Of a DNA stretch of 64,000 nt, positions 3,560 through 62,662 are shown in pieces. The stretch's first letter is position 1. Each line of letters opens with the position of its first letter. Below the pieces are notes generated by a model. That model made no database searches. It had not been told where the DNA came from and saw only the letters and a program-made list of their open reading frames with translations. The stretch comes from Schmidtea nova (Eukaryota). A program made the position numbers and the translations under genes. Location of the stretch: contig CM097882.1 in the NCBI GenBank assembly GCA_044892505.1, forward strand, positions 145,080,001 to 145,144,000, written 5' to 3'.

Positions 3560-4010
3560 TATTTCGCTAACAAGAGCTAGTCGAGAACTGAAAGATTTAC
3601 CACCCCCGATTTTGAGAACAAAAAAATGCCCAGATGTTCAAATGTAGAAAAGCGTTCGGGGAGAAAAGTTTGTTTTCAATTTGGGAAACTGGTCGAGACA
3701 AGGTGCTATAACGAGGAGGCCCCGGTTGGCCTATTTCAGCAAACAGTGTTATTCTCCTAAATTCGGTAGACTCTTAATCATCGTCATGGATCACAATCAA
3801 GAGCCACGAAAAGTCATCTAATGGGGACACATCCCCAAGGCGAACTCGCCTAGCTAGGACTGAATCTGTTAACTTCACCCCGTCCTTACGGGAAAGCTCA
3901 CGAGAGAAGGACGCCAGATTTTTCCATCATTGAACTTCGGCAGAAATTCATAAATGAGGGCCTCCACGTTGCCCACGTATTTGGAAAAAGAAGGACTGGC
4001 TAGGATTGTG
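3560..4010 (+). pseudogene. E1 ORF1 remnant (GGPxWP family, unknown function)
   Basis: Reads ELKDLPPPILRT..., RGGPGWPIS, KFGRLLIIVMD and VI*WGHIP across frameshifts; homologous to 43848-44348. Confidence 0.8.
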
Positions 4011-4181
4011 ATTTTCTTGTTTTATAATTATATCCAAATAAACTGTTGTTCCTATTGATTTGGTTTTATTATTTAGTTAAGTAGAGAGTGAAACTACCTT
4101 ATATTTATATTAATAAATTTAAAAAATTTTCTTTTTCTTCTCTCACTAACTAACCGAGATATTTATTTTTCGTTGAGCAGT

Positions 4182-4767
4182 ATGAACCGAGAGACAGAGC
4201 ACCAAGCTGAACGAGAGAAAGCTGTGAGAATTCGACTCAGCTTAGAAAAAGAGATTAAGCAAGTGAAAACCAAATTAGCTCAAGCAGAGGCACAAATCCA
4301 ATATTTACGCAAAGGCTGGTTTGCGCCAGCACGGATGAAAGAACAGTTGGCTCGTACGGAACGCGCTCAGCGAACAGCGGATGAATACCGGATTGAGTGG
4401 GAGGCCACCAAAATTGAACTGAGAAAATTCCTTCACTCGGTGACAACATCATTTATTGACTCCGAAATCAGAGCCCAAATCAGGCCCATCACGTATCAGC
4501 AGTGGGCGGGAGAAAAGAAACACGCTTGTTCAGTTGGAACTGACGTGGAGGGGTTGGAAGCCGTAACCATTTTGAGTCCGGCAGAATCAACAGAAATCGC
4601 CACAAATTCCAACGGTACCAAGAATATAAAGCGGATAAGCTCCAAGCGCCGAAGGCAGAAGAAACTGTTAGCTCAGCAGTCAGTTACAAGAGCAGATCGA
4701 ACGGATGGCCGACATGAGCGAGTTGGATCTATTAGCTGAGATTCTCCCACTCAACGGAGACTTCTAA
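4182..4767 (+). pseudogene. E1 ORF2 (coiled-coil, WFxP motif, Arg-rich tail), frameshifted near the C-terminus
   Basis: ATG at 4182 follows GAGCAG|T. Reads YLRKGWFAPARMKEQL, SVGTD and KRRRQKK. A frameshift near 4680 restores QLQEQIERMADMSELDLLAEILP. Confidence 0.8.
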
Positions 4768-4921
4768 GAATTTTTTGTAAATAAATGAATTTTTACGGCG
4801 TAGCGCATTTTTGTTTTGTCTTATATAATTTAAGGAGTTTGTAGTTAAATTAAAATTATATTTTGAAATGTATTGTCTAGTTATTTAAGAAAGTTGAGCG
4901 TAATTATTGAGAGAAATGACA

Positions 4922-5153
4922 GCGTAAGACCTTCTAACGGCAGCAGAAACCCATGAAAATAAATGGAGAGTAGTTCCAGCGATGGAGCTCACCTGCCCAT
5001 CTTTTTTCAATCACCTTGCGCATTTCCAACCTAACTATACAAGGAGTAATTAGGGGCGCTCGAGTGAGATAGTGTATGTTTATGCATGATTATGGATAGG
5101 GCATTCCTAGTATATTGACGAATTGTTTTCCAAACCCTTCCATAAACCCAGCA
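4922..5153 (+). ncRNA. 3' structured RNA module A with anti-SL segment (E1)
   Basis: GTAAGACCTTCTAACGGC at 4924-4941; GUUCCA-GCGA-UGGAGC hairpin; bulged stem containing AUUUCCAA; covaries with other copies. Confidence 0.7.
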
Positions 5154-5382
5154 ATTTGGACATAATTCTTAAATAGTAGGTCAATTTGCTGACGTTTTGT
5201 GGTTTATAATGATCGATTTTGATATATTAATAAATTTTTACTGATGAGATTGATTATTTTTGCTTGCTGTTATTTATGAATTAAGAAGACAATCATTTGT
5301 TTCACTTCAAGCTATTTATTATAAAGATCCTAATGAATAGTTAGGGATTACTTAACTAGTGTGGGACAAAATTGGCAAAGAA

Positions 5383-9969: not shown

Positions 9970-10527
9970 TTAATTTAACAACACTGATGGGTTTATGACC
10001 GCGATCAATTGTTTCTCAGTGAGACCACTCAGAAGGTCTAATTCAATTCCGACTCTTTCAGCGTATTCCCTTCGCTCTCGTCTTCGTTTTGCTCCTAATC
10101 GGTTCCGACGTTTTGTCCGTTTGGAGCCCTCAAGTGGCGACATGGTTATTGGAGTACTCGCCATGGAACTCGAGTCCATATCTGTTTGTGTACTCATGGA
10201 TACGTTAGTAGTCTTCACCCAGCGATTGAAAGTGCTGGCTCGGATGAGGGATCGTAACTGCTGCGTGATAAATTCTTTGGTGGACACCCTCATATAATTA
10301 TTTAGCTCCAGCTTTACAGCGGCAGCCTCTCGTGTTTGCTCGTCAGCTATCTGCTCGGCTCTGTATCTCGCTTGTTGAATCAGTTTCACCCGTTCCGGAT
10401 GAAACCATGTGGTTTTCACTCTTTAGTGTTCCTCACTCAACTGTTGTAGCCTACCTTCGAGAACTTTAATTCGTAATTTGTGCTCCTTAGCCTCTCTCTT
10501 ATAGTTACGATTGTGGCTTTCATTCAT
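9970..10527 (-). pseudogene. E3 ORF2 (coiled-coil, WFxP, TQT, Arg-rich) with one in-frame stop
   Basis: TTTTTAG|ATG at 10527; MNESHNRNYKREAKEHKLRIKVLEGRLQQLSEEH*RVKTTWFHPERVK...STQTD...NRLGAKRRRERR. Confidence 0.8.
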
Positions 10528-10822
10528 CTAAAAAGGAGGAAACGAAGATCAATCTGTACTATGATTCATTTACGGTCCTATATCCCCCTCTTACCCTTGA
10601 ATGTTATGGTATTAGTATTCACAAATCGGTATCTCCCCTTACTCTTTATCATACAGTCACCCATTTGTAAATCAACATCACACCTGCATCATTCGCTTTT
10701 TATTGAATTAGACACAAAAGTTCTTGGTATAACCATTTATTAATTTCATCACAAATCATGACACCTTCACGTCCGTTTTGCCATCTCCTTTAGAAAAATT
10801 CCAATAGGTCTTGGTTAAATTG

Positions 10823-11362
10823 TCAGTTGGCTCGTCCTCTCCCATCCGGTTGGTAGATTTCTGGGCACGGGTCCCAACATAACCGATCCTGGTATGCAAA
10901 GACTTCCCATAGTCTTTCGTTGTTTGGCCCCGACTGAGTGTTCATATTTATATTTCCGGGTGCATGGAAGTAGGATTGTCTTTTGTAAACATTGTCCGTG
11001 TAAACACATCGGGGTTGGTCCATTAGGATGTATCCGAGTTTGTGGAAGTCGGACCTTGTCATAGAATTGTCGCTCAATATCCACTTGGGTTGGCTTTGGG
11101 AGTTCTCAAGCTGTAGAAACCATCGGCTGCCGGCTCGATTCGGCGTCTTTGATGACATTGGCCACTCCGGATCGCCTTCCCATCGCACCCTTAGCTGGAA
11201 AGACCCTATCGTTCCTCGGGTGGCTGGGTCGACGTGGCCTCGCATCCAGGCTCTCAGGTGTCGCTCGGCCGACCACTTTATAGCACTGGGGATGAGTGTT
11301 GGATCTTCGAAACGCCATCTTCGGATAGCGCGACTTCGCTGTCGTTCTCTTTGGTATTTCAT
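10823..11362 (-). CDS. E3 ORF1, 179-aa Trp-rich protein of unknown function
   Basis: Intact ORF preceded by TTTTTAG|AGG-ATG; WEGDPEWP core aligns with GGPxWP of other copies. Confidence 0.7.
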   Translation of the reverse strand: MKYQRERQRSRAIRRWRFEDPTLIPSAIKWSAERHLRAWMRGHVDPATRGTIGSFQLRVRWEGDPEWPMSSKTPNRAGSRWFLQLENSQSQPKWILSDNSMTRSDFHKLGYILMDQPRCVYTDNVYKRQSYFHAPGNINMNTQSGPNNERLWEVFAYQDRLCWDPCPEIYQPDGRGRAN

Positions 11363-13109: not shown

Positions 13110-13420
13110 ATGGAAAACCTGCGACAAGTAGTAGATACAAGTAATGAACGTCTATAACAGAGGCGTATACGCCTATTAAAAGGAAAACTGAACCAACGAG
13201 AGGTAGAGGTCGACGAGCTACGGCAGACGTGGTTTAGTCCGACCGCAATGATAGATGCATTAAAAAGTAAGAATAGAGTACAATGAGCACTCGATGAACA
13301 GATTGTGGGTAAAGAGACGTCGCGAGCGGAGGGCTTTCGCAGCGCGCGTGAATCTTGAGGAGGATTTATTAAGCGGGTTAACAGAGAGACAATTGGTCAA
13401 TGTAATTAATAACAATATAT
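13110..13420 (+). pseudogene. E2 ORF2 remnant (internally deleted)
   Basis: TTCTAG|ATG; ELRQTWFSPTAM; NRLWVKRRRERRAFAARVNLEEDLLSGLTERQL, matching the E3 ORF2 C-terminus. Confidence 0.8.
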
Positions 13421-13429
13421 TTTTAGGCT

Positions 13430-13757
13430 GAATAAATGTATTAATTTATTTGTGGGGTTAATATTTTTATCGAATGATGCGAATGAATATGCGTATGGTG
13501 AACTAATGAACCAAATTAATAACTAAAAGGGGACATGAGTTAAAACTGCTGAGACCTTCTATCGGTCGAAATGAACCCGTAGATGATAGGGGAATAAATG
13601 TATTAATTTATTTGTGGGGTTAATATTTTTATCGAATGATGCGAATGAATATGCGTATGGTGAACTAATGAACCAAATTAATAACTAAAAGGGGACATGA
13701 GTTAAAACTGCTAAGAACTTCTATCGGTCGAAATGAACCCGTAGATGATAGGGGAAT
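13430..13757 (+). repeat. 162-bp direct tandem duplication including the anti-SL segment
   Basis: Two near-identical units start at 13430 and 13592. Confidence 0.95.
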
Positions 13758-15082: not shown

Positions 15083-16273
<1,191 letters not shown>

Positions 16274-17306
16274 TTAGATAATTTTTAATGAATTCGATTG
16301 ATATTTATATGAATTTTTCTTTGTGTGTGCCAAAATTTAGACAAATGTCTTAATTTAGTCATTCCGGTTATGTAATACAAGCAAAATCAACTTCCAATGA
16401 GTCACAAAGACAAATTGAACAATCAAATATGAATAACTGCATACCAATGTTTTCCTAATTTGTTTATAATGTTAGACACGATTAAAATGTGAAGTAATTT
16501 GCTAAATTTCGTATCTAACTGCTTATCAAATTTCAAATTCAATACGGATATTTTGATATGTTAATGAAATATTATAATTTTTTACAATGCCAAGCATCAT
16601 TCTTCATTTTTAATTTAATAATTAAATTTTAATGTTAAGTTATTGTTTTAAGTGAAGTTATTGTTACCTAATTTTTAATGAAATGGCGGTATTACAATGA
16701 ACGTGATTAGTATTGTTTTATATCATTATAATAACATTACAACATATTTCTTGATTTATAATTTATGTAGAATATACTTAAAAACCCCAAATTAAAAGTC
16801 AAAATTATGATTTGTCAAATCAAACAGTGATAATTTGATATAATCAGTGTTTGATCTAGGTTCTAACTAAAAATACTAAGTTTTGAGTACAAGTTATAGA
16901 AAATTTTTTTTGTCATTTCTATATACTTAAAATAATTTTTTTTAATGATATAATACATGTCTGCTAATATATATGGCTATTAGATGATAATGCATTATGA
17001 AACTCGAGGAATCAGTATAACAAAAAACCCTTTATGTTTTAACCAAAAATTTTCAGAATTATGGTAATATAAATGAAAAACAAAAAAAATTCTTAAAAAT
17101 ATACTTTGTTTAGAAACATCTGGCATTTAAGAGAAGGTCATCCTGGTATACCGTATATATTTGATTTTACAATTCACTAGCTGGAATATTCGTCACTGAC
17201 CGGGCTAGTTAGAAGATAAAAATATATTCCAAACGGCCCCGTGCAGTGATGTTAAACTAACAAAGAAAAATATAATTATATGAAAATTTCTTTATTTATA
17301 TTAGTC

Positions 17307-17527
17307 TGGTGTGGACACCGTTTCTTTTTTTGAGGATGATCTAGGTGGTGGATGCGACCCACACTTCAACATAAATTTACCTCTATCCCACTCGTACACC
17401 CATGGTAATTCCCCGGATAACCATGTTGGAACTGTGTACGACAGTGAAAGACTAGTGGATAGGTGAGCCCATTACAATGACTACTCTTTCTTCATCGGGT
17501 TCTAGAGGCCGTTAGAAGGTCTTACGC
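17307..17527 (-). ncRNA. 3' structured RNA module A (E5)
   Basis: Plus strand 17508-17525 GCCGTTAGAAGGTCTTAC; UCGUACAC/GUGUACGA outer stem; CAUGGU/ACCAUG inner stem. Confidence 0.7.
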
Positions 17528-17568
17528 CTCTTACTATTTATTGATTCGCGTTCACTATTCTTTATTTG

Positions 17569-17810
17569 TGATGGGATTGTGGATGGGCTTGTAAAAACAT
17601 ATATGTTGTAAATGTCGTGTTCTAGGGATCCCTCACCCACAACCCTGCATAAACTGATCGTCGACACGCGTATGCCCTTGATTATTCCTTACTAGTCAAG
17701 TTGGTACTGCATACGGTGGTGGAAAAATGATGGGCAGGTGAGCTCTGTTACCAGAACTACTCCCAATTTATCTTCCCTCGGGTTCTTGTTGTCGATAGAA
17801 GGTCTTACGC
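17569..17810 (-). ncRNA. 3' structured RNA module A (E4)
   Basis: GCGTAAGACCTTCTATCGAC; GUUCUG-GUAA-CAGAGC; CGUAUGC/GCAUACG; AGUACCAA bulge. Confidence 0.72.
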
Positions 17811-18100
17811 ATTTAAATCCTATTTCTATTCGTCCCAATATCAATCTTTGATCTCTATGCCCCCATTTTCCGAAAACGCTTTCTCCTAACTTTCGTATAT
17901 TACTTTCGGTAGTTAATTTTATCTTGTAATTAATTAAATCGGTTTTTTTGCGGTGATTAACGTTTGTGCAACTTGTGAGGGAACTGGTTACTTCAATTTG
18001 TTTAATTTAGTAGGAATATTTTTTTACGAGGAGAGATAATATAAAATCAGCAACTCTTAAACTAGAACATATTTATTTTAGACACATCGATATCAACACG

Positions 18101-18677
18101 TTATCTCATAAAATCCAAGTCGATTTCGTCCATCAGTTCAAATTCTGTTAACGCGCTTAATCTATCGATCTGATTGGTCATACGCTGAGCGAATTCTAGG
18201 CGACGGCGCCTTTGTCTTGATCCTAATCGGTTCCTTCGCTGCTGTCCGACTGTGGTTACGGGAACTGTTGGTTCTGGTTGGCTGCTGCGAAGTGTGGGAG
18301 GAACTTCCATTATAGGGTTTGGAGCCATGATATTCTCGTCCTCCGTTCCAATTGCAATCTCCTGATATTTGCTTTAGGTCCATCGCTGAGCCGTAATTGG
18401 ACGGATTAACGCGCGCAGTTCGGTGTCTATATAGTTCTTCGTCACCGAATTTAGACAATTTCGCAGCTCTCTCTGGACTGCGTCGAGCTCCGTCCTAGTC
18501 TCAGTTAAAGCTTCCTGCATTCTATCCAGTTTTAACAGTTGGGTTTTCATTTGCTCTGGAGAAAACCATCGAGTTTTGAGTTTCTCATTTGCGACCGTGA
18601 GTCGCTTGATGCTGGTCTCTCATCTTCCGCTCTTGAACTTGGTTTGTAAATTTCTTTGAATTTTCGATAGAATTCAT
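18101..18677 (-). pseudogene. E4 ORF2
   Basis: TTTAG|ACCAA-ATG; KTRWFSPEQMKTQL...IRPIT...AIGTED...NRLGSRQRRRR; one frameshift and one stop. Confidence 0.8.
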
Positions 18678-19638
18678 TTGGTCTAAATAGTACAATACTT
18701 ATTGCCATGGTTAATTTACCGGTGGTTTATATTTTACTGAAATAACATAATAGCTATAAAGTGGACAAAGTAAACACCATTAATTCTAACACAAGTGGTG
18801 ATTAGATTTTGTGAATTTATTGAAACTTTATCTTCACCACTTCAAGAATTTTAGATGTTTAATTTATTGTGCTTAATTACTGACAAATGACTAAAAGAAC
18901 TCTCATTTACTAAGACATTTATTGAATTAAATTAGTCACTAGACATTTTTCCCCGTTAGGAAAATATAGTTCGGATTTGCAGATTCATTCTGAATGTCTT
19001 TTGACCCAACAAATTCATTCTCATGGCGCATCTCATGTCTATTCTGGGGTTGGTTGTCTCTGTGCTTAGGAAGATTTGAAAAAATAGCGCTCGCAGTGTA
19101 ACCCGTTAGTAAAATTCTCGTTACTTAATCTCCGTTGTCCCATGTGCAAAACCTCGAAACATTATAATATTTTAAATGTCAATAATTTTCCTACCGGGTG
19201 TGGAGCCTCTAAGCACCACGACGCGGACACACCCTGGGAACATGTAGCTCCCATTTGNNNNNNNNNNNNNNNNNNNNNNNNNNNNNNNNNNNNNNNNNNN
19301 NNNNNNNNNNNNNNNNNNNNNNNNNNNNNNNNNNNNNNNNNNNNNNNNNNNNNNNNNNNNNNNNNNNNNNNNNNNNNNNNNNNNNNNNNNNNNNNNNNTA
19401 CATATAATTAATATAACAAAATGGATGGCAAAAATCATGAATAACATAAAATAAAACCAAAGTACCTAATTTGTCTAGTTGCTTTATTAACTGCTTGATA
19501 GTATTGATTTAATTCGGTCTGTCAATTGATCGTCTAGTAATCAAAGTTCAAGTTGAAGTCACAATCAAAATTCAATCAGTTCAGTTAACTCAATCGATTC
19601 AATCACTTCAATTAATGCTATTTGATCTAAAGTCTGAT

Positions 19639-19678
19639 CAGTATTTATACTGATTTGTCTGGATCAGATTAACCAATC
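19639..19678 (-). promoter_or_regulatory. E4 CCAAT/TATA promoter
   Basis: Minus strand GATTGG...CAGTATAAATACTG. Confidence 0.7.
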
Positions 19679-20248
19679 CGGATTGACCGTCTCTACCGTA
19701 GGTCTCATTATTTATTTTATTTGCCTAATTAATTTTTTAGTTTTCAGATTCAATTCTCTTTAGGAGGTCCAGTTTTCCAATCAATTTTCCAATTACAAGT
19801 ACTTTTATTTTATTTAAATTATTAATATTCTACAATTTATTTGTTTTAGGTGCCTCTTATGACGGCTAATTTTACAATTTCTCTTGACCATTCTTTAAAA
19901 TTTTATCTCAAACTTATCTATAATTTATTTATTTATAATTTTTTTATAATTTTTTTTTTTTTTATAATTTCATTTATAGTTTCTACGTTTTTTTCTTTTT
20001 GTTTTAATTGTTATAAATTTAGTTTCCTTTTTACTCTGTTTAACTGGCCCAACATTTGTCTACATGTAATTATTCCAATATGAGCTTTATTCGAATATTT
20101 TATTAGTTAAAAAATCTTTCTATTTTCCGATTTGTTATGAAATACTCAAGTTAACTCAACTCAGAACAAAACAATTATTTCATATTAAATTTCGTGATTT
20201 CCTTCACTGAGTCAGATGACACCCACTAAAAACTCCAATTCAGTTAGC

Positions 20249-20560
20249 TCATCCAAACCTTCGACCTGGGCCTTGAATTGCTGAGCGAACAGCTTCTATT
20301 GTCGTCGCCTCTGCGCCAATGCGTTTGCGCTTGTTGGATCCCGACAGATTCACTGCTATCTGCTCTGAATTGTCTTGACCAAGGAGCACGGTTTTGGTGA
20401 GGCCACTCATGTCCGTTCCCACCGAACAAAACTTTTTCAGTTGATTGGTCCCTTTTTGTAATGTAATTGGGCGGATGCATGGCTCAACTCTGTCTCCTCG
20501 AAAGATCGGGTGACCTAGTTGAGACATTTGCACAGCTCTATCCGAGTAGCTTTAAGTTCC
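20249..20560 (-). pseudogene. E5 ORF2 fragment
   Basis: IRPITLQ...FCSVGTDMS...KRKRIG, matching E1 and E7 ORF2. Confidence 0.7.
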
Positions 20561-22164
20561 TATGCCATCTCTCACACCCTCTCTTTACTATCTCCGCATC
20601 ACAACATTACCCTTGGCTCTATATTAACCATGCTACCCTTCCTATTGGCCAAAACTGCCTTAAATAACTTTTACCCATAATGACCCTTAGTATGTAAATT
20701 AATCAGAAGAAATCAAGTACTTAAGTCGCAGGCAACAATACCTCGTGGTAATTCCTTCGTTAAAAAATTGAACGGTATTATTCATCAATCAACCGATTTT
20801 ATATTTCTATCGCTTTGGACCAATTCCAAACACCCCGTTGGTATTTCCCTTTCCAAATATTTTCATTAAACCTGGAGCCTTCCGGCTCCATATCTTATAA
20901 TACATCACGCTGTCGGTTTCGTCGAAAATGTTTCCTAAATTTCTCACTAGAACCCCCTATGCGCAACCCTCCTTCAGATACCATCGAAAAATCATTTTTG
21001 TTATAGATTTTAATAACAAATTTGCAATTTAACTTCTCTAAAACATAGTCACCAGTTCGTGGAGCTAAGAAGCCCCACGCAGATGGATCGCACCCTTGCA
21101 GCGTGAGCTACAGAGGACACTATACTAAAACATAAATATGAAAAATAAAAACGCTAATTATCCACTTAACTTATATATTTATGTGCAAATAAAAATATCA
21201 TGAAAGCACCAAAATTAAAATTAGACAAATGTCGGGCTGGCGAAATCGGAAAATAAATTTTGTTTAAATTTATCAAAAATTAAATATATACAAGAGGGAA
21301 CAAGTTTAAAAACGCACGATAAAGTATTACACAGTAAAACAACGCAAAAGAAAATAAAAATAGTATAGTACAATAGTAGACACACGAACCGCATTCCATA
21401 AGTCGGGCGAGATAGGGTTGAAACGATAGAAAAGATGCATCTCGAAAGAGAACCCATAATTTGAGAGCAGGTCACATTTACACATGAAGAACCGCACGAA
21501 AATTGAATGGGGAAGATTATCACTGTATAAAATAACGAAAAGCATGATCAAAGAATAAAATTGAAATCAGGATAAAGAAAATAATTTATTAAAAATTATA
21601 GGAAAAATCCCCATTGAAAAATCGGAAAATAACAGAGATAGAAAAAAATAGAATTAAATTAAATTGATTGTTTTAATCAATCAATTAATGTACAAAAACA
21701 GTGGACACACACACCATTTAACGAAATTAAAAACAAATATTTTAGAAATAAAAAAATCAAATCATAAAATTAAAATTACAAAAAAAATAAATAATCATTT
21801 ATTAAAACTAATAAATTAAGTTTAATCGTTAAAATAATTATTTACATAATATCATTCGTGGGTGCAAGTTGATTTGATATAAATAGACGCTGAGAGTCAC
21901 AGTTAGTTGGTAGTTAGCATAAAATTTTCAGTATTTCATTTTTGCCAGCCAGTCGCGTGAGTGAGTAGGTTTGTTTTGTTATATTTTTAATGATAATTGG
22001 TAATGCATATTGAATTTAGCTACGATAATAGTTTTATTGTTAGCTTGTTGAATAAGAAGTGTTATAAATTACAATGGTATCTAATAAATATTTAGAATTG
22101 AAATTTTATGTTTTGGCTATTTGCGAGTAAACCCTCATAATAACCGGAGTAAAATTCATAAAGG

Positions 22165-22455: not shown

Positions 22456-22695
22456 GCGTAAGTCTTTCTATCGGCAGCAAGAACCCGAAAGAGAGAATTT
22501 AGTGAGGAGTAGTTTCGGCAACGGAGCTCACCTGCTCACTCGATTCTCACCACCGTGTACAGTACCAACATAGTTACTTGAGGAATAACTATGGGTACAC
22601 GTGTGTGGTAGATTGATATTTATGTTGCGTTATGGGTTGTATTAACCCCTAAAAATCGTTAATAGTTTTTAAAACAACACCCATATCACTCAACA
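22456..22695 (+). ncRNA. 3' structured RNA module A (E6)
   Basis: GTAAGTCTTTCTATCGGC; GUUUCG-GCAA-CGGAGC; CGUGUAC/GUACACG; CAUAGUUA/UAACUAUG. Confidence 0.72.
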
Positions 22696-24737
22696 CAAAT
22701 ACAAAATTTACCTAGAAGTTCCTTGAGAGTATTCTGTAAATTAGAAGTAGTGTAACGCATGTAAAATCGGCTGAACTAATTCGAAGATTTTGCAAGTCTA
22801 ACNNNNNNNNNNNNNNNNNNNNNNNNNNNNNNNNNNNNNNNNNNNNNNNNNNNNNNNNNNNNNNNNNNNNNNNNNNNNNNNNNNNNNNNNNNNNNNNNNN
22901 NNNNNNNNNNNNNNNNNNNNNNNNNNNNNNNNNNNNNNNNNNNNNNNNNNNNNNNNNNNNNTTTGATCGCTGAGACATTGTACTGTAGAAGAGAGACAAT
23001 AGACTTCTGCCGGATTTAATATTAAATCCAAAAAAGTAAATTTTCATGTTTTTTTGGATAACAACTTTGACATTCTTTCCTCATTAGTATAGTAAGTAGA
23101 ACGAATTAGAATTTCTAAAGTTTTACTTGGAAAAGTAAATACAATTGTCTACCTTTACCAATAATTTAAAGTTTATATATCCGGACATACAATCACACAT
23201 TCATTTTTATATTAGATCTAACAACTCCGATTTTGATTATGTCTAATTACTCTGTATGTTACACATTATTTGAATTTTTACATTTACAATTGCGATAGAT
23301 GCTATAGGTCAACCAACAGAGTATTTTAAGGAACATTGGTGTACGAAGGTTTGTAAATTGAGACGAATAAGTACATGACTTTTTGGAGAAAAGGTTCACA
23401 TTATTTTAACTTTCAGTGGCGAAGAACTTAATGATGACGAATATTTATATGATTGCGGATTTGTGCGAAAGGAAACTGGTGAAGATAGATTTATGAGTTA
23501 AGACCAAGTACAAAATTGTATAAACTGGGTAGAAGTCAGAAAACAATAAGACTTAGAAAGAGCAATGAGTATTTTAGGTATAATTGTGTAGAGGAAACTG
23601 AAAATGAAATTCATTTAGAAAGTATGGCGAATATGAGTAAAAATAATAATGTTGAATATGTAACTAAAATAGACAAGGAGGAAGAAGTGGGTACAATTAA
23701 TAGGGAATATAGTGAGCCAGCTGGTGAAGAAAATGATTTGAGTGGTATAGAAAAAGGAGTGGAAATTAAAAATGATTAAAACAGTAGAAAATATATAATT
23801 GGTGAAAGAAAAAAAGTCTGAAAATGAAGTAGTAAATAAAATTTATATTAATTTGTGTGAGTTAGAAAACTTGTTGGAGGAAAATAAAATGAAACATGAA
23901 GCATTTGTAGTGAAAACAGAAGTAATTAATAGACAAGATGAAAAAGAATATATAAATGAACCTAGAGATGAAAGACCAGTTATAGAAAAGGCAAAAAAAT
24001 AAAGAGAAGAGGATTTAGGTTTCGGTCGTTTTTAATGCTCATACTAAGTTGTGGGTACTCGGTTCTATTGATTATTATCATTTTTCTTTCAATGGGTCAT
24101 GAATCTGCACTGCTTTTGATATTCTTATTTGGTAGACTCGAAGATATCGATGCTAATGAGGTTCTGTTTCAATTTAATAGGGTTATTCTTTAGATTGGTC
24201 TTTGATTTTACGATTCACTTTCATATTTAATTATGGGTGTCTTTTTTGATTATGGATCTTCTTTTTGATTGACTTGATACAGTTTAATTTAGTATTTATT
24301 TTTCTAATTTTTTTCTGGGTCGATTTGTTCGTCTTCTATTCTTACTGTTCTGATTTTCTTTTTGATTTGGGTTGATTGTTTGATTTCTTTATGAATTGTT
24401 AAGCATGATGATTTCTTGATCTGTTTTTTTTTAATATTGTCAATTGCATTTTCGTACCATAAAAAGTCCTCACTCGTATAGAAAATTGATTTTACTCTTA
24501 CATGGAGAGAATCGTGAACGGAAACAAGAACTTCCCAAAGTTTCATCGCTGTATTTTTTCCCCTTCTAGCTCTTTTTGGTGCCATTATTTTATTTTTATT
24601 TTGCTTTTAATTAATTTTTAATTTCTAGAGTTATAATATTTATTTGTAAATGATGATATATAAAAAATTTCATCTCTATACAATTTATGATAATCAAAAC
24701 TATATTGATTTATAAAAAAATAATTATAAAGTACAAT

Positions 24738-38115: not shown

Positions 38116-38224
38116 GACCTTGACAACCAATCAACAATTAGTGGAAATCGACACGGAAATTTTCTCTCTGATCAATAAACGGAAAGCCTCGAAAAACTCA
38201 TCGGTCAGGTACTTCAAGAGACAG

Positions 38225-41391: not shown

Positions 41392-42699
41392 GTAAGCACA
41401 TTTTTATTATTTGGTGCGGGGTCATTGAAAAGTCATGCCCCTTCAATTACCCCGTACCCAGTAATATTTTATTTTGTCCTTTGAATTTTAGTGTATTGTT
41501 ATTATTTCATTATTAATTTTATATGAAAATATCAAACTTTATATGTTATATGATTCGTTTTTATCCTTATTTTATTTATTATTTAAATTTTACTTTACTG
41601 TCACAAATTCCCATATTTAATAACAACTCTATTTCATGCAATATTTATTGTATAATGATAAAAAATAATTTTCTTTTGCTTCCATATCCTCTAACATCTG
41701 TTCTGGCCTCGTGCCGTACGGATGGAAGTAGCCTGAGCGGATCGCTGGTTCGATTTGTAATCGATCAGCCCATTTTTCCGACTTTAGGTGATACGCCCAA
41801 ACATCCATGATCACTTCATCCCAACTGGGGAACAGTAGCTTGGCCAAGGGCAAGATTTTTAAATTAATGATCAGCAATTTATATTAATGTATTTTATCCG
41901 AATTATATTTTATACCATATAGTGTAATTAAAAACTGATACTGCATGTTGTGTATATGAAAGTTGGAAATTTTTATTTATTATTTGTATTTATTATTATT
42001 TTTATTTATTATTTGTATTGAGTATGGTACTGTGCATACCGGAACCCCCCCTTTACACTATTTAGGCGCNNNNNNNNNNNNNNNNNNNNNNNNNNNNNNN
42101 NNNNNNNNNNNNNNNNNNNNNNNNNNNNNNNNNNNNNNNNNNNNNNNNNNNNNNNNNNNNNNNNNNNNNNNNNNNNNNNNNNNNNNNNNNNNNNNNNNNN
42201 NNNNNNNNNNNNNNNNNNNNNNNNNNNNNNNNNNNNNNNNNNNNNNNNNNNNNNNNNNNNNNNNNNNNNNNNNNNTTTGAATTCATCAGCTTACTATATT
42301 AATAAACTATAGTAAGCTATGAAATCAGAAATTGAAAAATTGATTAAAAATGTTGGGCCCGCCAAATCACCTAAAATCACAATAATAGAACAAAAATATA
42401 AAATAATAAGGAAATAATAAACATAAAAATGACAATAAAAACAAATTAAAAATAAGAATAAAATGACAAATAATATTTGATAAGTTTCCAGCAAAAGGAA
42501 ATTTTGAAAATAAACCGGTAAATAACAGCAAAAGGGGGCAAGAAATAAGAAAAAATAGAATTAAATAAACTAATAGTACAAATAATTAATTAATTACTCG
42601 AAAAATCAGGACCACCCAGCGAGAAACCGGAAAAGGAAACAAAATAATGTTTAGGTTTAAATAAAATAATAAAAATACTTTGATGGACGGTCTGATCCT

Positions 42700-42736
42700 G
42701 ATTGGTCAATCCGACCAGCCGGATCAGTATAAATAC
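42700..42736 (+). promoter_or_regulatory. E7 CCAAT/TATA promoter
   Basis: GATTGGTCAAT...CAGTATAAATAC. Confidence 0.7.
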
Positions 42737-43847
42737 CGATCCGAAAATCACTAAGTTAGAATAATTTTTACTCGAAAGAGGTTTACTGAGAGAAATTTTA
42801 CTCAAAAGAATTTTACTCACAAGCATATATTTTACGTACAAGAATTTATTCACTTCGAAATTTCAAATCATTCAATACAGGATAAAGGTACGAAGGAATA
42901 AAGTTTTTATTTATTGTCATCTTTAAATGATTATTAATGTACCTATGATTTCACCATTTATTTAATTATAATTTTATGTTTAATTTTACTTCATTTGATT
43001 TTATCTTAATTTAACCATGCATATAGTTATACTTCCTAGGCTGCTCACGCGACGACGGAGTCCGAGTCGTCGTTGTGGGGCCTCACGGTCTCACATAGCG
43101 GTTCAACCTTTTTATTCTTTTTATTTTTTTTTGCGATTGTAATTTGAGAACTGTCAAAGATGCGAATTTATTAAGAACGATTTTCAGTTATTTTTCACAC
43201 TTAGTTATTTGATAAAAATTTTCATAGTGAATTGTAAAAAATTCGACGATTTTCTGACGATAATTAGAATGTCACCTATTCGGTTGCACAGAGGGCGTAG
43301 TGTGGGGCGCAGCGGAAAAGGCGGAAAGAGCTGCCAGAGGGTATGCAGCACCAAATGAAAGTCAGGTATCAGCCTCCAAAGTATTAAGATTATAAGGAAA
43401 AAATTTGAGACTCTGGAGCATAAGCGAGACGATACAAATTAGAGAAATATGCATTCAAATCGATCAAATTTACAATTTCATGAAGGGTCAAAGTACGACT
43501 CGATAATATCGACTTGGATAATGCAGACGAAATACGTCACAACATTCCTATTAAATAAATTATCTAAATTCTAAAAATACTCTTAGACCGATCGCCGTAC
43601 ATGGCGCGGAATTTCCTAATTTATAGTCCGATCGCTGTATATAGCGCGGAGAATTTTCATCAATTTTTATTCTTCCTGAACGCTTTATCTAGCGTAGGGC
43701 CACGTAACTATAAAGACGTAATCCAACCGTGGTATATCGCGGCGAAGACAAATCAATTTAATCATATTTTAAACCATTTTTTGTTGTCATACGCAGTATC
43801 AGTAAATCTTCCGACAAATTTTCTCGGTTAAATCATATTTTTCTAAA

Positions 43848-44348
43848 ATGTTTGACAAACTAATACAGATGTCGGCAGCCGATGTTATGGAAAGGTTGAC
43901 CCAAATTCGGAATTCGGAACAAGGGAGCACGGGAAGTGGAACGGCCTCCCAACTCAAGGAGCTGCCCGCACCGATATTGCGGACCATTAACGCCCAAGTA
44001 TACAAGTGGCGGCACGGGTTTGGTCGAAAATGCCCGTTATCCATATGGGCTGGAGGAAAAGATCGAGTATTCTACCGGGGAGGACCGAATTGGCCAATTT
44101 CACAAAAGTCTTATTCGAAGAAATTTGGGCGGATAGTCATTGTGATAAACGACGCAGAGGGACGACCGAGTCAAATAATCTATTGGGGACACATCCCTCG
44201 CCGAGAGTTATGCAAATTAGGACTGCAAGCGTTCCTGCCGCGGAAACCGTTTGGCAAGGAATGTCAGGATGGGCAACCCCCATTTTCTTGGGCTCGACTT
44301 CGACAGATGCCAATCAACCACGAACTACACAGCCTATTTCGGCGATAA
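43848..44348 (+). CDS. E7 ORF1, 166-aa protein of unknown function
   Basis: Open ATG ORF; KWRHGFG...YRGGPNWP...KFGRIVIVI...IIYWGHIP. Confidence 0.7.
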   Translation: MFDKLIQMSAADVMERLTQIRNSEQGSTGSGTASQLKELPAPILRTINAQVYKWRHGFGRKCPLSIWAGGKDRVFYRGGPNWPISQKSYSKKFGRIVIVINDAEGRPSQIIYWGHIPRRELCKLGLQAFLPRKPFGKECQDGQPPFSWARLRQMPINHELHSLFRR

Positions 44349-44528
44349 ACTATGTGACAATGATATTTCTAAATAAAAATCTTATTGTTTATCAGTGGTC
44401 TTTGTTTTTAAATTTTTGTGTTATTAAGTCTATCATGTTCTTGACATAATAATCATTCGCTCGTATTGTAATTATAAACATGTTTTAACCATAAAGCGAC
44501 AAAGCAGTTAATTTAAATCCATTACAGA

Positions 44529-45125
44529 ATGAATACAGATCTTGCACAAAGAGAGCTGGAAAAGATGTGGCGAATCTGGAGAGCCCAGGACAAGGAATTG
44601 GGTCTCCTCAAGGAACAACTATCCAAGGCCGAGGCGCAAGTCACCTATTTGCGCAAAAGCTGGTTCGCTCCTGCTCGGATGAAGGAGCAGATTGGTAAAA
44701 CCGAGCGTGCGCAGCGAACAGCGGAAGATTACAAAATGGAATAGGAAGCTACCAAAATCGAGCTTCGGAAATGCCTACATTCTGTGACAGCCTCCTATAT
44801 CGAACGGGAACTGCGGGATCAAATCCGACCGGTCACATATCAAGAATGGACGGCGGAAAAGAAGAGCGTAAACTCGATCGGCACGGACGTCGACGATCTC
44901 GTTGGAATTTGTAACGAGCCGGTTCCATCAATAAATCCAGCCACCCAAACTGCCAATGCTCACCAGAAACGTAAGCGCATAGGGCAGAAAAGGCGACGGC
45001 AAAGAAAGCTGTTCGCTCAACGATTGCAGAACCAAGTTGACGGCTTGCACAAATTGACAGAGGAGGAACTATTAGGAGAAATATTTCCCCCAGCCGAAGT
45101 TTTTACTGATTTAATTGAAAAATAA
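44529..45125 (+). pseudogene. E7 ORF2 with a single TAG (likely TGG) at 44742
   Basis: TTACAG|A-ATG; YLRKSWFAPARMKEQI; NSIGTDV; ATQT; KRRRQRK. Confidence 0.85.
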
Positions 45126-45357
45126 ATGAAATCTCGTATTAATTGTCATTTTTGTTGTTTACCTAAAATAGTTTAGTTAATAGAATAAACAATAATATCT
45201 CTGAAATAAAAAGAATTATAAAATTATAATACAAAATATATAAAAAAGGTAACTAAATAATTAAATGAGCACTATGTCAGAAAACTTCATGTAAAATGAG
45301 TGATGTCAAAGACAAATTTTCTAAAGTTTATCGTGGATTACAGAGCAGATGATTAGA

Positions 45358-45593
45358 GCGTAAGTCCTTCTAACGGCAGCAATGAACCCGTAAACATAAA
45401 TGGGGAGTAGTACTAGCGATAGTGCTCACCTGCCCATCATTGTTTAACCACCCTGCGCATCACCAACTTGATTATATAGGGAAATAGTCGAGGGCGCTTG
45501 AGTGTATAATTGCAATTTTATGTATGATCATGGATGAGGGATCCCTAGTCATTGTTAGAACATTTTTCATCTAACCCCTCCATGAACCCAGCA
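45358..45593 (+). ncRNA. 3' structured RNA module A (E7)
   Basis: GTAAGTCCTTCTAACGGC; GUACUA-GCGA-UAGUGC; CUUGAUUA/UAGUCGAG. Confidence 0.72.
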
Positions 45594-46396
45594 AAAATAA
45601 TAGAAGCTAACAACAATTTTTAACAAGATTTTGAAAACATAAAACTGAAGAACTAACAAAATAAAGATTTTTTCCACACTATTGAGAATATTGGATTTGT
45701 TTACCTAATATCAAAGGATAATTCAGCTGATCAATCAAGAAGAGCAAAATTATCAAATCAAAGGATAATTGTGTATATCGAATTTATTCCCCCCCGCCTA
45801 ATCTTGCTACAAACCCAATCCCTCCGGAAGTGAGCGATTACCAAATCTCACACACTCGAAGATTGTGTATATCGAATTGTATTCCCCCCGCCTAATCTTG
45901 CTACAAACCCAATCCCTCCGGAAGCGAGCGATTACCAAATTAACACCAACTAAAGTAACTTTTGTAAAGTTGAGTAGATTAAAAGTTTATTATTCTAACA
46001 GTTTTAATTGTTAATAATTATTTGATCTTATTATTTGTTTACTTATTTATTCTCACGCACTTGAACATTACAAAGCATACACCCCGAGTGTCCCCACAAT
46101 AATCGGGCTGACTCTCTCGGGCGCTTACATTTCTCCCTGTACATATTTATAACATCTGACTATAAAAAACTTTCGAGACAAGTAAATTAGCACATTAGAA
46201 CATTACAACTGGTGTCAGAAGTCAACACAACACACACACTCACCGTTTTTTTCAAGCGTTAACGCCTGCAGCATACCTATCATAGAGGTATAAGGATTAA
46301 CGTCACTTTTAGCCGAACACAGTAGGCTATATCCTTTAGTCAAGCTCATTTTTTTCACATAAAAAACAACATAACAAACAACAACAATACAATTAA

Positions 46397-60170: not shown

Positions 60171-60959
60171 ATGAACCTCTAGCAGAAGTTGGAAGAAATT
60201 CATCGGCTGACTCTGGAAAATGCCAGACACAATCGCAAGGTGCATCAGTGTTTCGCCGAGCTGGAGAAAATGAAAGCATCAAATTCAGACGCCCTACAAA
60301 TAATGACTGTTAATAATTAAAGATTTGTTGTTGTTAAATTATATTCAAATAAAACTGCTTCCGTAATAATTTGTCTTATTCGAACAAATTTAAAATGGCG
60401 AATTAATCAATTAAATAATAACGACAATTATGCGTGCCAGCATTTATACTTATAATAATTTGACTATATAATAAAATTGATTACTTATAATACAATATAT
60501 GTTATGTATAAATTAGTTAATTAAATATCCCTAACAATGACCTCCCGGATAGAGAAATTCAGAGCTCGCTGTCGGGAAATGGAATCGACGTGGTCCGACA
60601 AAGAGACCGTCAGTAAATTAAAGAAGCAGAATCAATTGCTTCTACAACAAGCTGCTGAAGACGCGATGAGATTGCGCGCGTGCAGGGTCACGATGCGGGA
60701 GCAGGAGCTCTTGATCGAGAAGTTAAGAGTGGATAGTAGCATCATCTCTGCCATATTGCCAAAGTCACAGCTTCCACCCCAGGAATTGTTCCCAGTGAGG
60801 GTTGAGGAGGAAATCCTGACACATCCCGCTCCGGAGAAGTCTAAACATCAGAAACCCAGTAAAGGGGTTAGAGCGCGAAGAAGACGTCACCAGGAAGCTC
60901 GTCTATTGGGCCAAATCCGAAAAGAATCGACCGAAATTCTTGACTTGACATTGATTTAA
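60171..60959 (+). pseudogene. ORF-D (coiled-coil plus Arg-rich tail) interrupted by a solo LTR
   Basis: TTTTAG|AA-ATG; MNL*QKLEEI...SDALQIMT, then the insert, then SRIEKFRARCREME...; paralog of 62090-62662. Confidence 0.8.
60308..60536. mobile_element. 229-bp solo LTR
   Basis: TGTTA...TAACA termini with exact 5-bp TSD ATGAC; absent from the paralogous ORF. Confidence 0.85.
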
Positions 60960-61274
60960 ATCTGACTATGATTTACTTTGATAGAGTTGACTAATCCTAT
61001 TGCTGATAAGTAATTCTTCATCTTTAATGTTTTAGTGTAATATGCATTGTATGTATTTCCTTTTAATTATATTAAACTTTTGAATTGAGTGTTAAATTGA
61101 ATTGTTGTTTGACTGTGGAATGCGTGATGAAAATCCTTAGCGAAAACGGATAGCGATCAGTAGAGAAAGACCAATCGAGATAGATTAATAAATTCTTGCT
61201 CATGAAACCTTTATTTCGCTAATTACCGGTAAAAGTCGGTAGCTGAATCATAGAAGAAGGGACAAAATGGGCAT

Positions 61275-61640
61275 TATACCTTCTATCGGTAGCCCTTGGA
61301 CCCAGGAGATATGCGGCCAATCATAGTTTCGAATTTTCGACTCTCACTGATTGCGAATACTAACCCATTTGTTGCATTACCAACGTTACATTGTGAAGGG
61401 CAGCAAGATGGTTAATCTAATGTTTTATGTGTTGAGTTTTTGATGAGAGCCATAGCAACGTCAAGGTCATATTGACGATCAACAACCCACCAAAAGTTAA
61501 AAGTTATTATGAGCGTAAGATCTTCTATTAGCAGCTGGAACCTGTGTGAGAGAATAAAATGAGGAGTAGTTTTTTTAAACAAAGGTCACCTGCTCATTGA
61601 ATTTTTGTGCCACTGTGTACATTACCAACATCTCTTACCA
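61275..61640 (+). ncRNA. Module B followed by truncated module A
   Basis: ACCTTCTATCGGT at ~61278; GTAAGATCTTCTATTAGC at 61514; GGAGTAG, TCACCTGCTC, ATTACCAAC. Confidence 0.65.
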
Positions 61641-61644
61641 AGAA

Positions 61645-61870
61645 GTAACTGGTGGGTTGTTGATCGTCAATATGACCCTGACGTTTCTATGGCTCTCATC
61701 AACAACTCAACACATAAAACATTGAAATTACCATCTTGTTACCCGTCACTATGTAACGTTGGTACTGTAACAAGTGGGTGGGTATTCGCAATCAGTGAGC
61801 GTCGTCAATACGAAACTATGATTGACCGAATATCTCCTGGGTCCAAGGGCTACCGATGGAAGGTTTCTTG
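61645..61870 (-). ncRNA. Module B (inverted copy)
   Basis: Reverse complement alignable to 61275-61495 with compensatory stem changes (GUUGC/GCAGC versus GUUAC/GUAAC). Confidence 0.65.
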
Positions 61871-62089
61871 CCCATTTTTGTCCCCTTAATTTATCTGCTC
61901 TATCACTGTGGATCCTTCATTCGAGATTTTCATTTGAATATTTTCGTAGACTGTGATTTATTTATTAATTAATCAATGTAATTGAGTGTTTTTATCTTTA
62001 TCTTTATCCCCATGCAATCATACAAAAGAAAACTAATTGCAAACTTATAATTACATCATAAAAATAACAACATTCACTACAAAAATCAC

Positions 62090-62662
62090 TCAAAAATGTG
62101 CGTGAGTCAGGTCGATAGTCAAGTCGCCGATTTTCGAGGCCTCGACCCTCAATTGTCCCAGTATTCGCGCTTCTTGTCGGCGCTTGTTTCTAGCCCTTGT
62201 CCCTTTACTGGGCCTCCATCGTTTCGGTTTGGTTGGAGCCGCGGCTGCTGAAATTTCCTCCTCCACCCTCACCGGGAACAGTTCTTGAGGTGGGATTTGA
62301 GGTTTTGGTAGTATGGCCGCTATGATACCACTGTCCACCTGCAGTTTTTGATTGACGAGTTCCTGCTCCCGCATGGAGACCCGACACGCCCGCAATCGCA
62401 TTGCGTCCTCGGCGGCCTGTTGCATCAGCATCTGATTTTGTTTCTTCAGCCGATCCACCGTCTCCCCATCGGACCATGTCGCCTCCATTTCGCGACAGCG
62501 GGCCCGGAATTTTTCCATTCGGCCGGTCATTATCTGGAGGGCGTCTGAGTTGGATGCGCCTTTGGCCTCTAGTTCGGCCAACCGTGCGTCGACCTTTTTG
62601 TTATGTTTTGCGTTTTCCAGCAATAACGCACGGATCTCCTCGAGCTGTTGCATTAAGTTCAT
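62090..62662 (-). CDS. ORF-D, intact 190-aa coiled-coil/Arg-rich protein of unknown function
   Basis: TTTTAG|AAA-ATG; open frame; clearly similar to 60171-60959. Confidence 0.75.
   Translation of the reverse strand: MNLMQQLEEIRALLLENAKHNKKVDARLAELEAKGASNSDALQIMTGRMEKFRARCREMEATWSDGETVDRLKKQNQMLMQQAAEDAMRLRACRVSMREQELVNQKLQVDSGIIAAILPKPQIPPQELFPVRVEEEISAAAAPTKPKRWRPSKGTRARNKRRQEARILGQLRVEASKIGDLTIDLTHAHF

What the first reader, a model, noticed from the sequence alone, without database searches (positions are those of the whole stretch)
22456..22695. Covarying ~230-nt RNA fold of no family I recognise
Seen by hand alignment. (1) A CCC..GGG hairpin after GAACCC. (2) A 6-bp GNRA hairpin with compensatory changes: GUUCCA-GCGA-UGGAGC, GUACUA-GCGA-UAGUGC, GUUUCG-GCAA-CGGAGC, GUUCUG-GUAA-CAGAGC, GUGGCC-GCAA-GGUUGC. 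(3) Conserved GAGUA and CUCACCUGCC flanks. (4) An outer stem (CGUGUAC/GUACACG, CGUAUGC/GCAUACG, UCGUACAC/GUGUACGA), an 8-nt AGUACCAA-type bulge and an inner 7-8 bp stem with a GGA-rich loop. (5) A long terminal stem. GNRA loops exist only on the ORF-sense strand, so selection acts on RNA. Inference: a ribozyme, packaging signal or RT-recruiting element; the stem-bulge-stem resembles hepadnaviral epsilon in architecture only.
Basis: partly seen in the sequence, partly recalled or inferred. Interest (0 to 1): 0.88.

Follow-up and report, generated by a model that had tools for sequence, protein, structure and literature searches.

The report
Conserved structured RNA tail of repeats
The flagged stretch is one of at least 14 diverged copies of a new, strongly covarying RNA fold of about 250 nt (a four-way junction plus a hairpin) that ends a multicopy repeat carrying orphan ORFs. 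It most likely marks that repeat's transcript for copying or packaging, and nothing shows it to be a ribozyme.

Summary
Window 22456-22700(+) is copy A of a ~230-270-nt module present at least 14 times in the window, in two subfamilies and about five lineages.

- **Covariation:** On plain MAFFT alignments 88-90% of cells pair, against 73-76% for column shuffles (0/500) and 29-49% for slid partners. On the model-fitted alignment 31 of 40 pairs change on both sides.
- **Strand:** G-U outnumbers A-C 64 to 15, and the structure conservation index is 0.63 sense against 0.43 antisense. The folded strand is the ORF-sense RNA.
- **Fold:** A closing stem P0, a short hairpin Pa, a long arm P1-P2-P3 with a conserved internal loop and usually a GNRA loop, an arm P4 / 8-nt bulge / P5, then a 3' hairpin.
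- **Correction:** GGG pairs downstream (P2) and CCC pairs upstream (Pa).
- **Databases:** No Rfam family matches. The upstream proteins have no detectable relatives.
- **Context:** The module is the best-conserved part of its unit and follows two ORF types with no detectable homology. Copies of different lineages pile up just downstream of each other's 3' ends.

Best reading (0.45): a cis-acting 3'-terminal recognition handle of a non-autonomous mobile element. A new ribozyme is unsupported but not excluded (~0.1).

The parts
22456..22700 (+). Copy A of the RNA module (the finding). It has no adjacent ORF.
   Evidence: Covariance model 174.7 bits, E 2e-38; sequence
22456..22625 (+). Copy A, four-way-junction core closed by P0 (22456-22462 with 22619-22625). 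The conserved unpaired run UCUUUCUA is at 22463-22470.
   Evidence: P0: 5 of 7 pairs change on both sides.
22471..22488 (+). Copy A, short hairpin Pa (22471-22474 with 22485-22488). It uses the CCC of GAACCC.
   Evidence: 31 of 36 cells paired
22492..22548 (+). Copy A, long arm. P1 is about 22492-22498 with 22542-22548. P2 is 22502-22506 with 22535-22539. P3 is 22511-22517 with 22522-22528, with GCAA loop 22518-22521. Its internal loop is GAGUA on the 5' side and CUCACCUGC on the 3' side.
22551..22605 (+). Copy A, second arm. P4 is 22551-22560 with 22595-22605. The 8-nt bulge AGUACCAA is 22561-22568. P5 is 22569-22576 with 22586-22593. The 9-nt loop is 22577-22585.
   Evidence: CCAAC is invariant in 12 of 13 copies.
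22626..22695 (+). Copy A, irregular 3' hairpin ending ..CAACA
   Evidence: z -1.0. Basal-helix compensation among A, B, C, D and F was read from the sequences.
17545..17813 (-). Copy B (subfamily 1). It follows the unit B coding block.
   Evidence: 173 bits
17276..17530 (-). Copy C (subfamily 1). It is a solo directly downstream of B and of another lineage (62% identity to B).
   Evidence: 98 bits; identity matrix
4919..5180 (+). Copy D (subfamily 1)
   Evidence: 182 bits
5363..5614 (+). Copy D2 (subfamily 2). It is a solo lying 173 nt after D.
45355..45625 (+). Copy F (subfamily 1)
   Evidence: 185 bits
13706..13962 (+). Copy G (subfamily 1). A partial duplicate, G0, lies at 13544-13649.
   Evidence: 127 and 31 bits
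9545..9799 (-). Copy H (subfamily 1)
   Evidence: 149 bits
38460..38642 (+). Copy I core (subfamily 1, divergent)
   Evidence: 65 bits
37885..38113 (+). Copy I0 (subfamily 2, solo)
   Evidence: weak; 79% identity to S2a
61510..61640 (+). Copy E (subfamily 1). It is cut at its 3' side and forms the spacer of an inverted duplication.
61259..61492 (+). Copy S2a (subfamily 2)
61650..61880 (-). Copy S2b (subfamily 2)
3576..4739 (+). Unit D coding blocks (N block and coiled-coil/basic block). The N block is broken by at least 2 stops and by frameshifts; similarity is spread over 3 frames. The coiled-coil block is an open 188-codon ORF.
43848..45125 (+). Unit F coding blocks. The N block is an open 166-codon ORF. 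The coiled-coil block has 1 in-frame stop. The 180 nt between the blocks are not open.
9970..11362 (-). Unit H coding blocks. Both are open (179 and 149 codons) but in different frames.
18101..18619 (-). Unit B coiled-coil/basic block, with 1 in-frame stop
20227..20700 (-). Copy J of the coiled-coil block. It is heavily decayed (10 in-frame stops, at least 1 frameshift), and no module follows it.
13179..13431 (+). Unit G: C-terminal fragment of the coiled-coil/basic block, upstream of copy G
60537..60959 (+). ORF upstream of S2a (140 codons, coiled-coil and basic). It has no detectable homology to the subfamily-1 block.
   Evidence: The hhalign test was run on its longer inverted partner, 62090-62662.
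62090..62662 (-). ORF upstream of S2b (190 codons), the inverted partner of 60537-60959
42640..42760 (+). Unit F 5' module with CCAAT-like and TATA-like boxes. Homologues are D 1934-2037 (+) and B 19633-19738 (-).
   Evidence: 73-81% identity; found only in these three units

Best explanation
The stretch is the 3'-terminal cis-acting RNA module of a multicopy, probably mobile, unit that encodes no reverse transcriptase.

Shown:
- The sense transcript folds into a four-way junction. Its parts are a closing stem P0, a short hairpin Pa, a long arm P1-P2-P3 with the conserved loop GAGUA/CUCACCUGC, and an arm P4 / 8-nt ..CCAA bulge / P5. A hairpin follows.
- The module lies 170-310 nt after the stop codon of an orphan coiled-coil, arginine-rich ORF.
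- The module has been kept by selection while the ORF nucleotides and the spacer diverged to background.

Inferred: the fold is the handle by which the transcript is picked out for propagation. A reverse transcriptase supplied in trans by a partner non-LTR element would bind it and start cDNA synthesis at the adjacent 3' end. The unit's own basic coiled-coil protein may bind it in cis to assemble the particle. The two arms with invariant unpaired bases would be the protein-contact surfaces. The helices only need to pair, hence the compensatory changes.
For: - The structure is real and specific to the sense strand.
- The core is the best-conserved segment of the unit. Core identity is 58-76%. 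The ORF gives 46-58% and the spacer 39-49%, both at or near the shuffled baseline.
- Module position after the ORF is constant in B, D, F, G, H, S2a and S2b.
- The module is shared by units whose upstream ORFs show no detectable homology (hhalign probability 0.13). LINE/SINE partners share 3' tails in the same way.
- Solo or 5'-shortened copies keep the 3' part: C, G, D2, I0, I and E.
- Four copies lie within 350 nt downstream of another copy on the same strand (permutation P about 0.003). The neighbours belong to different lineages, so these are not local duplications.
- A composite junction is shared by D2 and S2a-E.
- The unit ORFs are mostly broken, yet their modules score highly.
- Precedent: R2 protein selectively binds the structured 3' UTR of its RNA as template (PMC11194090). 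Stringent-type LINEs are recognised through a 3' stem-loop (PMC5135761 abstract).
Against: - No non-LTR reverse transcriptase or endonuclease lies in the window. The only RTs are two Ty3/gypsy pol genes not linked to the module.
- No target-site duplications, poly(A) tails or terminal microsatellites were seen.
- AAUAAA follows only B and C.
- The three longest units share a conserved upstream CCAAT/TATA-like module and about 400 nt before it. That is hard to carry through an RNA copy unless it lies inside the transcript.
- Only 14 copies from one window were available, and no second genome.
- Protein binding is untested.
Confidence: 0.45

Rival explanations
1. It is a 3'-UTR control element of a fast-evolving, clustered, intronless host gene family, acting in localisation, translation or 3'-end formation. 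The logic would resemble the conserved 3' stem-loop of clustered histone genes.
For: - Each long unit has its own conserved CCAAT/TATA-like module.
- The coding blocks are intronless.
- Units lie in both orientations in one region.
- No mobility hallmarks were found.
Against: - Most coding blocks in the window are broken.
- The module follows ORFs with no detectable homology.
- Solo modules of other lineages stack behind complete units.
- There are 14 copies in 64 kb among transposons.
Confidence: 0.15
2. It is a new class of self-cleaving or ligating ribozyme. Two adjacent arms of a four-way junction carry invariant internal loops that could dock, as in the natural hairpin ribozyme.
For: - The invariant unpaired bases sit in junctions and internal loops.
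- The four-way junction has two loop-bearing arms.
- Modules occur head to tail.
- Flatworm retroelements are known to use ribozymes, for example the twister variants at the 5' end of Perere-3 (PMC8501958) and the hammerhead retrozymes (PMC7229834).
Against: - No ribozyme model of Rfam matches any copy, even at E<=10.
- No truncation point recurs inside the module.
- Tandem neighbours are of different lineages and are not homogenised monomers.
- The module is 3' of the ORF, not at a 5' end.
Confidence: 0.1
3. It is an RNA stability or 3'-end-protecting structure for the element's transcript. It could block exonucleases or be processed like a tRNA-like structure, without any role in template choice.
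For: - It is a compact multi-helix junction at the 3' end of the unit.
- A poly(A) signal is weak or absent after most copies.
Against: - ARAGORN finds no tRNA-like fold.
- No Rfam stability element matches.
- This reading does not explain the stacking of copies or the sharing of the module between different ORF units.
Confidence: 0.1
4. It is an epsilon-like signal for encapsidation and protein priming in a pararetrovirus-like element.
For: The arm P4 / 8-nt 5' bulge / P5 / apical loop has the stem-bulge-stem architecture.
Against: - No polymerase or capsid gene of that kind lies beside any copy.
- No Rfam match.
- The arm is one part of a larger junction.
- The likeness is one of shape only.
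Confidence: 0.03
5. It is an independent Pol III small-RNA gene or SINE, or an artefact of DNA palindromes or antisense coding.
For: The copies are short and numerous, and some are solo.
Against: - Runs of four or more T lie inside 11 of 12 copies.
- No tRNA, 7SL or 5S head is present.
- Stops occur in nearly every reading frame of every copy; only one frame of one copy is free of them.
- G-U pairs are strand-asymmetric.
Confidence: 0.03

Closest known systems
R2 non-LTR retrotransposon 3' UTR RNA
   Same: - A multi-helix structured 3' UTR of a few hundred nt.
- The fold is conserved more than the sequence.
- It lies at the very 3' end of the element RNA.
- In R2 it is the part the protein binds to select its template (PMC11194090, PMC10499050).
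   Different: - R2 encodes its own RT and endonuclease and is site-specific in rDNA.
- Here no RT is linked.
- Rfam's R2 element model does not match.
- Binding is untested.
3' stem-loop tails shared by stringent-type LINEs and their SINEs
   Same: - One 3' RNA structure is shared by different elements.
- 5'-shortened copies keep it (PMC5135761, PMC6510757 abstracts).
   Different: - Those are single short stem-loops next to a repeat tail.
- This is a four-way junction of about 170 nt plus a hairpin.
- No terminal repeats are present.
- The partner LINE is not identified.
ORF1-only LINE derivatives (HAL1-type; from my own knowledge)
   Same: A non-autonomous unit that keeps a coiled-coil, basic, RNA-binding-like ORF and a 3' end, but has no RT.
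   Different: - The ORFs here have no detectable similarity to any LINE ORF1 family.
- Descent from a LINE is not shown.
Ribozyme-bearing flatworm and metazoan retroelements (twister variants of Perere-3; hammerhead retrozymes)
   Same: These are structured RNAs built into repeated elements of flatworms, and some are arranged in tandem (PMC8501958, PMC7229834).
   Different: - Those are known ribozyme classes of 50-80 nt, placed at 5' ends or in homogeneous tandem monomers.
- No such model matches here.
Hepadnaviral epsilon
   Same: Lower stem, 5' bulge, upper stem, apical loop.
   Different: - The likeness is architecture only.
- The genomic context differs.
- No Rfam match.

Membership tests
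Any Rfam 15 family, including hammerhead, HDV-like, twister, twister-sister, pistol, hatchet, hairpin, the R2 element and the histone 3' stem-loop | Match to the family covariance model at its gathering score | tested here: not met
   No match at gathering score over the window. No match on any copy at E<=10.
Self-cleaving ribozyme (any class) | Site-specific self-scission of the RNA | not testable with these tools
   Only indirect evidence is available: no copy boundary recurs at an internal site.
RT-recognition 3' tail of a non-LTR retrotransposon | Lies at the 3' end of an element that encodes RT and endonuclease, or is shared with one | tested here: not met
   The window holds no non-LTR RT. 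The module follows RT-less units. A partner elsewhere in the genome could not be searched.
RT-recognition 3' tail of a non-LTR retrotransposon | Conserved secondary structure maintained by compensatory change | tested here: met
RT-recognition 3' tail of a non-LTR retrotransposon | 5'-truncated copies with an intact 3' end, target-site duplications, and a 3' poly(A) or repeat tail | tested here: inconclusive
   Solo and shortened copies are present. No tails were seen, and AAUAAA follows only 2 copies. Target-site duplications could not be resolved in old copies.
RT-recognition 3' tail of a non-LTR retrotransposon | Specific binding by the reverse transcriptase | not testable with these tools
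   -
SINE or Pol III small-RNA gene | A tRNA-, 7SL- or 5S-derived head with internal promoter, and no internal terminator | tested here: not met
   ARAGORN finds none. Rfam finds none. T4+ runs lie inside 11 of 12 copies.
Hepadnaviral epsilon | Lies in the pregenomic RNA of a genome that encodes a protein-priming polymerase; matches the family model | tested here: not met
   No such gene lies next to any copy. No Rfam match. Rfam holds an epsilon model, to my knowledge.
tRNA-like structure | A cloverleaf recognisable by tRNA finders | tested here: not met
Hammerhead retrozyme or satellite | Homogeneous tandem monomers that each carry a hammerhead | tested here: not met
   No hammerhead match. 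Tandem neighbours are only 37-62% identical and come from different lineages.

The most novel reading that the evidence does not exclude
The four-way junction could be a previously unknown class of self-cleaving or ligating ribozyme. Its two loop-bearing arms would dock to form an active site, and the RNA would process the repeat's transcript in flatworms.
Probability: 0.1. Interest if true: 0.9.

Novelty: new variant of a known kind. Interest (0 to 1): 0.6.

Why it matters
Robustly covarying RNA folds of about 250 nt that match no family are rare. This one would be a new Rfam-grade family.

It is shared by units with different orphan ORFs and no reverse transcriptase. It therefore offers a marker for tracing which element copies which in a flatworm genome. 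It would also be a larger and more elaborate example of 3'-end template recognition than the short stem-loops known from LINE/SINE pairs. If it instead proved catalytic, it would add a new natural ribozyme class.

Tried and rejected
- **Protein searches.** None gave a usable hit:
  - Pfam on 28 ORFs gave nothing for the unit's ORFs.
  - PDB sequence search gave only chance hits.
  - The word-indexed protein search with the 188-aa ORF and with an N-block alignment gave 0 hits.
  - The exhaustive profile search of 1.84 billion representatives gave 0 hits.
  - The AlphaFold model of the N block had pLDDT 39 and was unusable, so no fold search was run.
- **Organism.** A gypsy ORF finds nothing above 53% identity. 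An exact look-up of a window ORF was not on record. The source genome is not in the protein collections.
- **Relatives elsewhere.** A pattern scan of metagenome contigs gave 5 loci, and none matched the covariance model, so they are chance hits.
- **LTR reading.** No second copy of the 5' module follows any unit.
- **Tertiary pairing.** Pairing of the conserved junction run with the P5 loop is no better than shuffles and is absent in subfamily 2.
- **Single long ORF.** The single-ORF model of the unit was rejected. There are two coding blocks with a closed spacer between them.
- **Poly(A) signal.** Evidence for one after the module is weak.
- **R-scape** is not available here.

Full report
**What is there**

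Window 22456-22700(+) is one of many copies of a repeat. BLAST of the region against the window found eight further diverged copies at 62-70% identity. A covariance model built from six of them scored 13 places at E<=1.2e-3. A 14th scored weakly and was confirmed by BLAST.

The copies fall into two subfamilies:
- Subfamily 1: A, B, C, D, E, F, G, H and I, plus a partial duplicate G0.
- Subfamily 2: S2a, S2b, D2 and I0.

Together they form about five lineages (identity matrix).

**Is it more than chance?**

Yes, by three independent measures.
- **Structure-blind MAFFT alignments.** The RNAalifold pairs are formed in 88.4% of cells (9 sequences) and 90.4% (6 sequences). Shuffling columns among sequences gives 72.6% and 75.8% (0 of 500 reach the observed value). 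Sliding the 3' partner gives 29-49%.
- **Model-fitted alignment of 13 copies.** 86.2% of cells pair against 68.0% when shuffled. 31 of 40 pairs change on both sides, and all measures give 0/500. That alignment leans towards the structure. The shuffles do not correct for relatedness, but the slid control does.
- **Strand and coding.** G-U cells outnumber A-C cells 64 to 15. The structure conservation index is higher for the sense strand, 0.63 against 0.43 and 0.41 against 0.19. So the folded molecule is the ORF-sense RNA. Nearly every reading frame of every copy carries stops, so the conservation is not coding.

**Anatomy (copy A coordinates)**

- P0, a 7-bp closing stem: 22456-22462 with 22619-22625.
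- An unpaired, nearly invariant run (A)CCUUCUA.
- Pa, a short hairpin: 22471-22474 with 22485-22488.
- A long arm:
  - P1 has a different sequence in every copy but always pairs.
  - P2 follows.
  - An asymmetric internal loop holds the conserved GAGUA and CUCACCUGC.
  - P3 is capped by GNRA in six copies.
- A second arm:
  - P4 is the outer stem.
  - An 8-nt bulge ends in the invariant CCAA.
  - P5 carries a purine-rich loop.
- An irregular 3' hairpin ending ..CCAnCA. Its basal helix shows compensatory changes among A, B, C, D and F, but its folding energy is unremarkable.

The spacing between the CACCUG motif and CCAAC is fixed at 35-38 nt. Subfamily 2 alone folds into the same general plan.

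The GGG after GAACCC pairs with a downstream CCC (28 of 32 cells) and co-varies with it. The CCC pairs with an upstream CGG (31 of 36). The proposed CCC..GGG hairpin pairs in only 18 of 32 cells.

**Context**

In B, D, F, G and H the module lies 170-290 nt downstream of the stop of a conserved coiled-coil ORF with an arginine-rich tail. A second conserved block, the N block, lies further upstream in D, F and H. The two blocks are separate, because the stretch between them is closed in F.

State of the coding blocks:

| Unit | N block | Coiled-coil block |
|---|---|---|
| D | Broken by stops and frameshifts | Open |
| F | Open | One in-frame stop |
| H | Open | Open, in a different frame from the N block |
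| B | Not found | One in-frame stop |
| J | - | Ten in-frame stops and a frameshift; no module follows |

Subfamily-2 modules follow a different coiled-coil, basic ORF that shows no detectable homology to the first.

The three longest units (D, F, B) also share a conserved 5' module with CCAAT-like and TATA-like boxes.

None of these proteins has a Pfam, PDB or database relative.

The module core is by far the best-conserved part of the unit. Its identity is 58-76%, against 46-58% for the ORF and 39-49% for the spacer, both at or near the shuffled baseline.

**Signs of mobility**

- Solo or 5'-shortened copies keep the module (C, G, D2, I0, I, E).
- Four copies lie within 350 nt downstream of another copy on the same strand (permutation P about 0.003).
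- Those neighbours belong to different lineages, so they are not local duplications.
- D2 and S2a share about 25 nt beyond their 3' end, including the first bases of a subfamily-1 module. A composite therefore seems to have been copied as a unit.

Against retro-type copying:
- No non-LTR RT is in the window.
- No tails or flanking duplications were seen.
- The poly(A) signal evidence is weak.
- A conserved upstream promoter-like module is awkward for an RNA-copied element.

**What it is not**

- No Rfam family matches.
- It is not a tRNA-like gene.
- It is not a Pol III gene, because of the internal T runs.
- It is not an LTR.

**Most likely mechanism**

It is a 3'-terminal recognition handle on the transcript of a non-autonomous mobile unit. 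A reverse transcriptase supplied in trans would read it, and the unit's own basic protein may read it too. This would work as the R2 3' UTR and the stringent LINE tails do (PMC11194090, PMC5135761). The structure and the context are shown. The binding and the template role are inferred. I put this at 0.45. A host-gene 3'-UTR element (0.15), a stability element (0.1) and a new ribozyme (0.1) remain open.

**Limits and disclosures**

- Only this window could be studied. The source genome and its relatives are absent from the searchable collections.
- The N runs were left untouched.
- Slips:
- While reasoning I briefly wrote out from memory short stretches of two known RNAs, a hairpin ribozyme and the 5' end of U1 snRNA.
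  - Searches showed where two broken copies are interrupted. Those places are not carried into the notes or the report.

Noticed in passing
window 1934-2037 (+), 42640-42760 (+), 19633-19738 (-): A conserved module with CCAAT-like and TATA-like boxes (73-81% identity) is found only in the three longest units, about 1.1-1.6 kb upstream of their coding blocks. It looks like a Pol II promoter.
   Followed up: partly
window 60276-61492 and 61650-62557: This is an inverted duplication (73-89% complementary) of two subfamily-2 units lying tail to tail. The 157-nt spacer is the truncated subfamily-1 copy E.
   Followed up: partly
window 5590-5620 and 61492-61530: D2 and S2a share about 25 nt past their 3' ends, including the first bases of a subfamily-1 module. 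A composite double tail appears to have been copied as one piece.
   Followed up: partly
window 17276-17813, 4919-5614, 37885-38642, 61259-61640: Module copies stack head to tail within 350 nt of each other four times (P about 0.003). The neighbours belong to different lineages.
   Followed up: yes
window ~43030-43110 (+): A GC-rich hairpin lies in the leader of unit F, inside a stretch that is also similar in unit D (2149-2384). It may be a second structured element.
   Followed up: no
window 15083-16081 (-): An actin coding exon (Pfam Actin, E 5.5e-132). A sub-threshold mir-3533 hit inside it is an actin-derived false lead.
   Followed up: partly
window 46397-50627 (+) and 31488-35168 (-): Two Ty3/gypsy elements with gag-like, protease, RT, RNase H and integrase domains. 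They are not linked to the module. The best database relative is only 53% identical.
   Followed up: partly
window 25614-27047 (+), 38748-40211 (+), 56368-57954 (+): hAT-like ORFs. The first two match DUF4371, and 38748-40211 also matches the hAT dimerisation domain. The third has no Pfam hit and is hAT-like only by eye. One starts about 100 nt after module copy I, which is probably coincidence.
   Followed up: no
window 29310-30113 (+) and 51989-52912 (-): Mariner-type and Tc1-type transposase ORFs. A palindromic sub-threshold mir-753 hit at 51793-51854 lies beside the second and may be a terminal inverted repeat.
   Followed up: no
window ~13434-13760 (+): A local tandem duplication with a 162-nt period creates the partial module copy G0. 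G0 stops at the conserved internal loop just before P3.
   Followed up: partly
window 9197-9520 (+) and 20227-20700 (-): These are stray fragments of the N block and the coiled-coil block without a module. In the second, the next unit (B) begins about 150 nt after the ORF end, where the module would be expected.
   Followed up: partly
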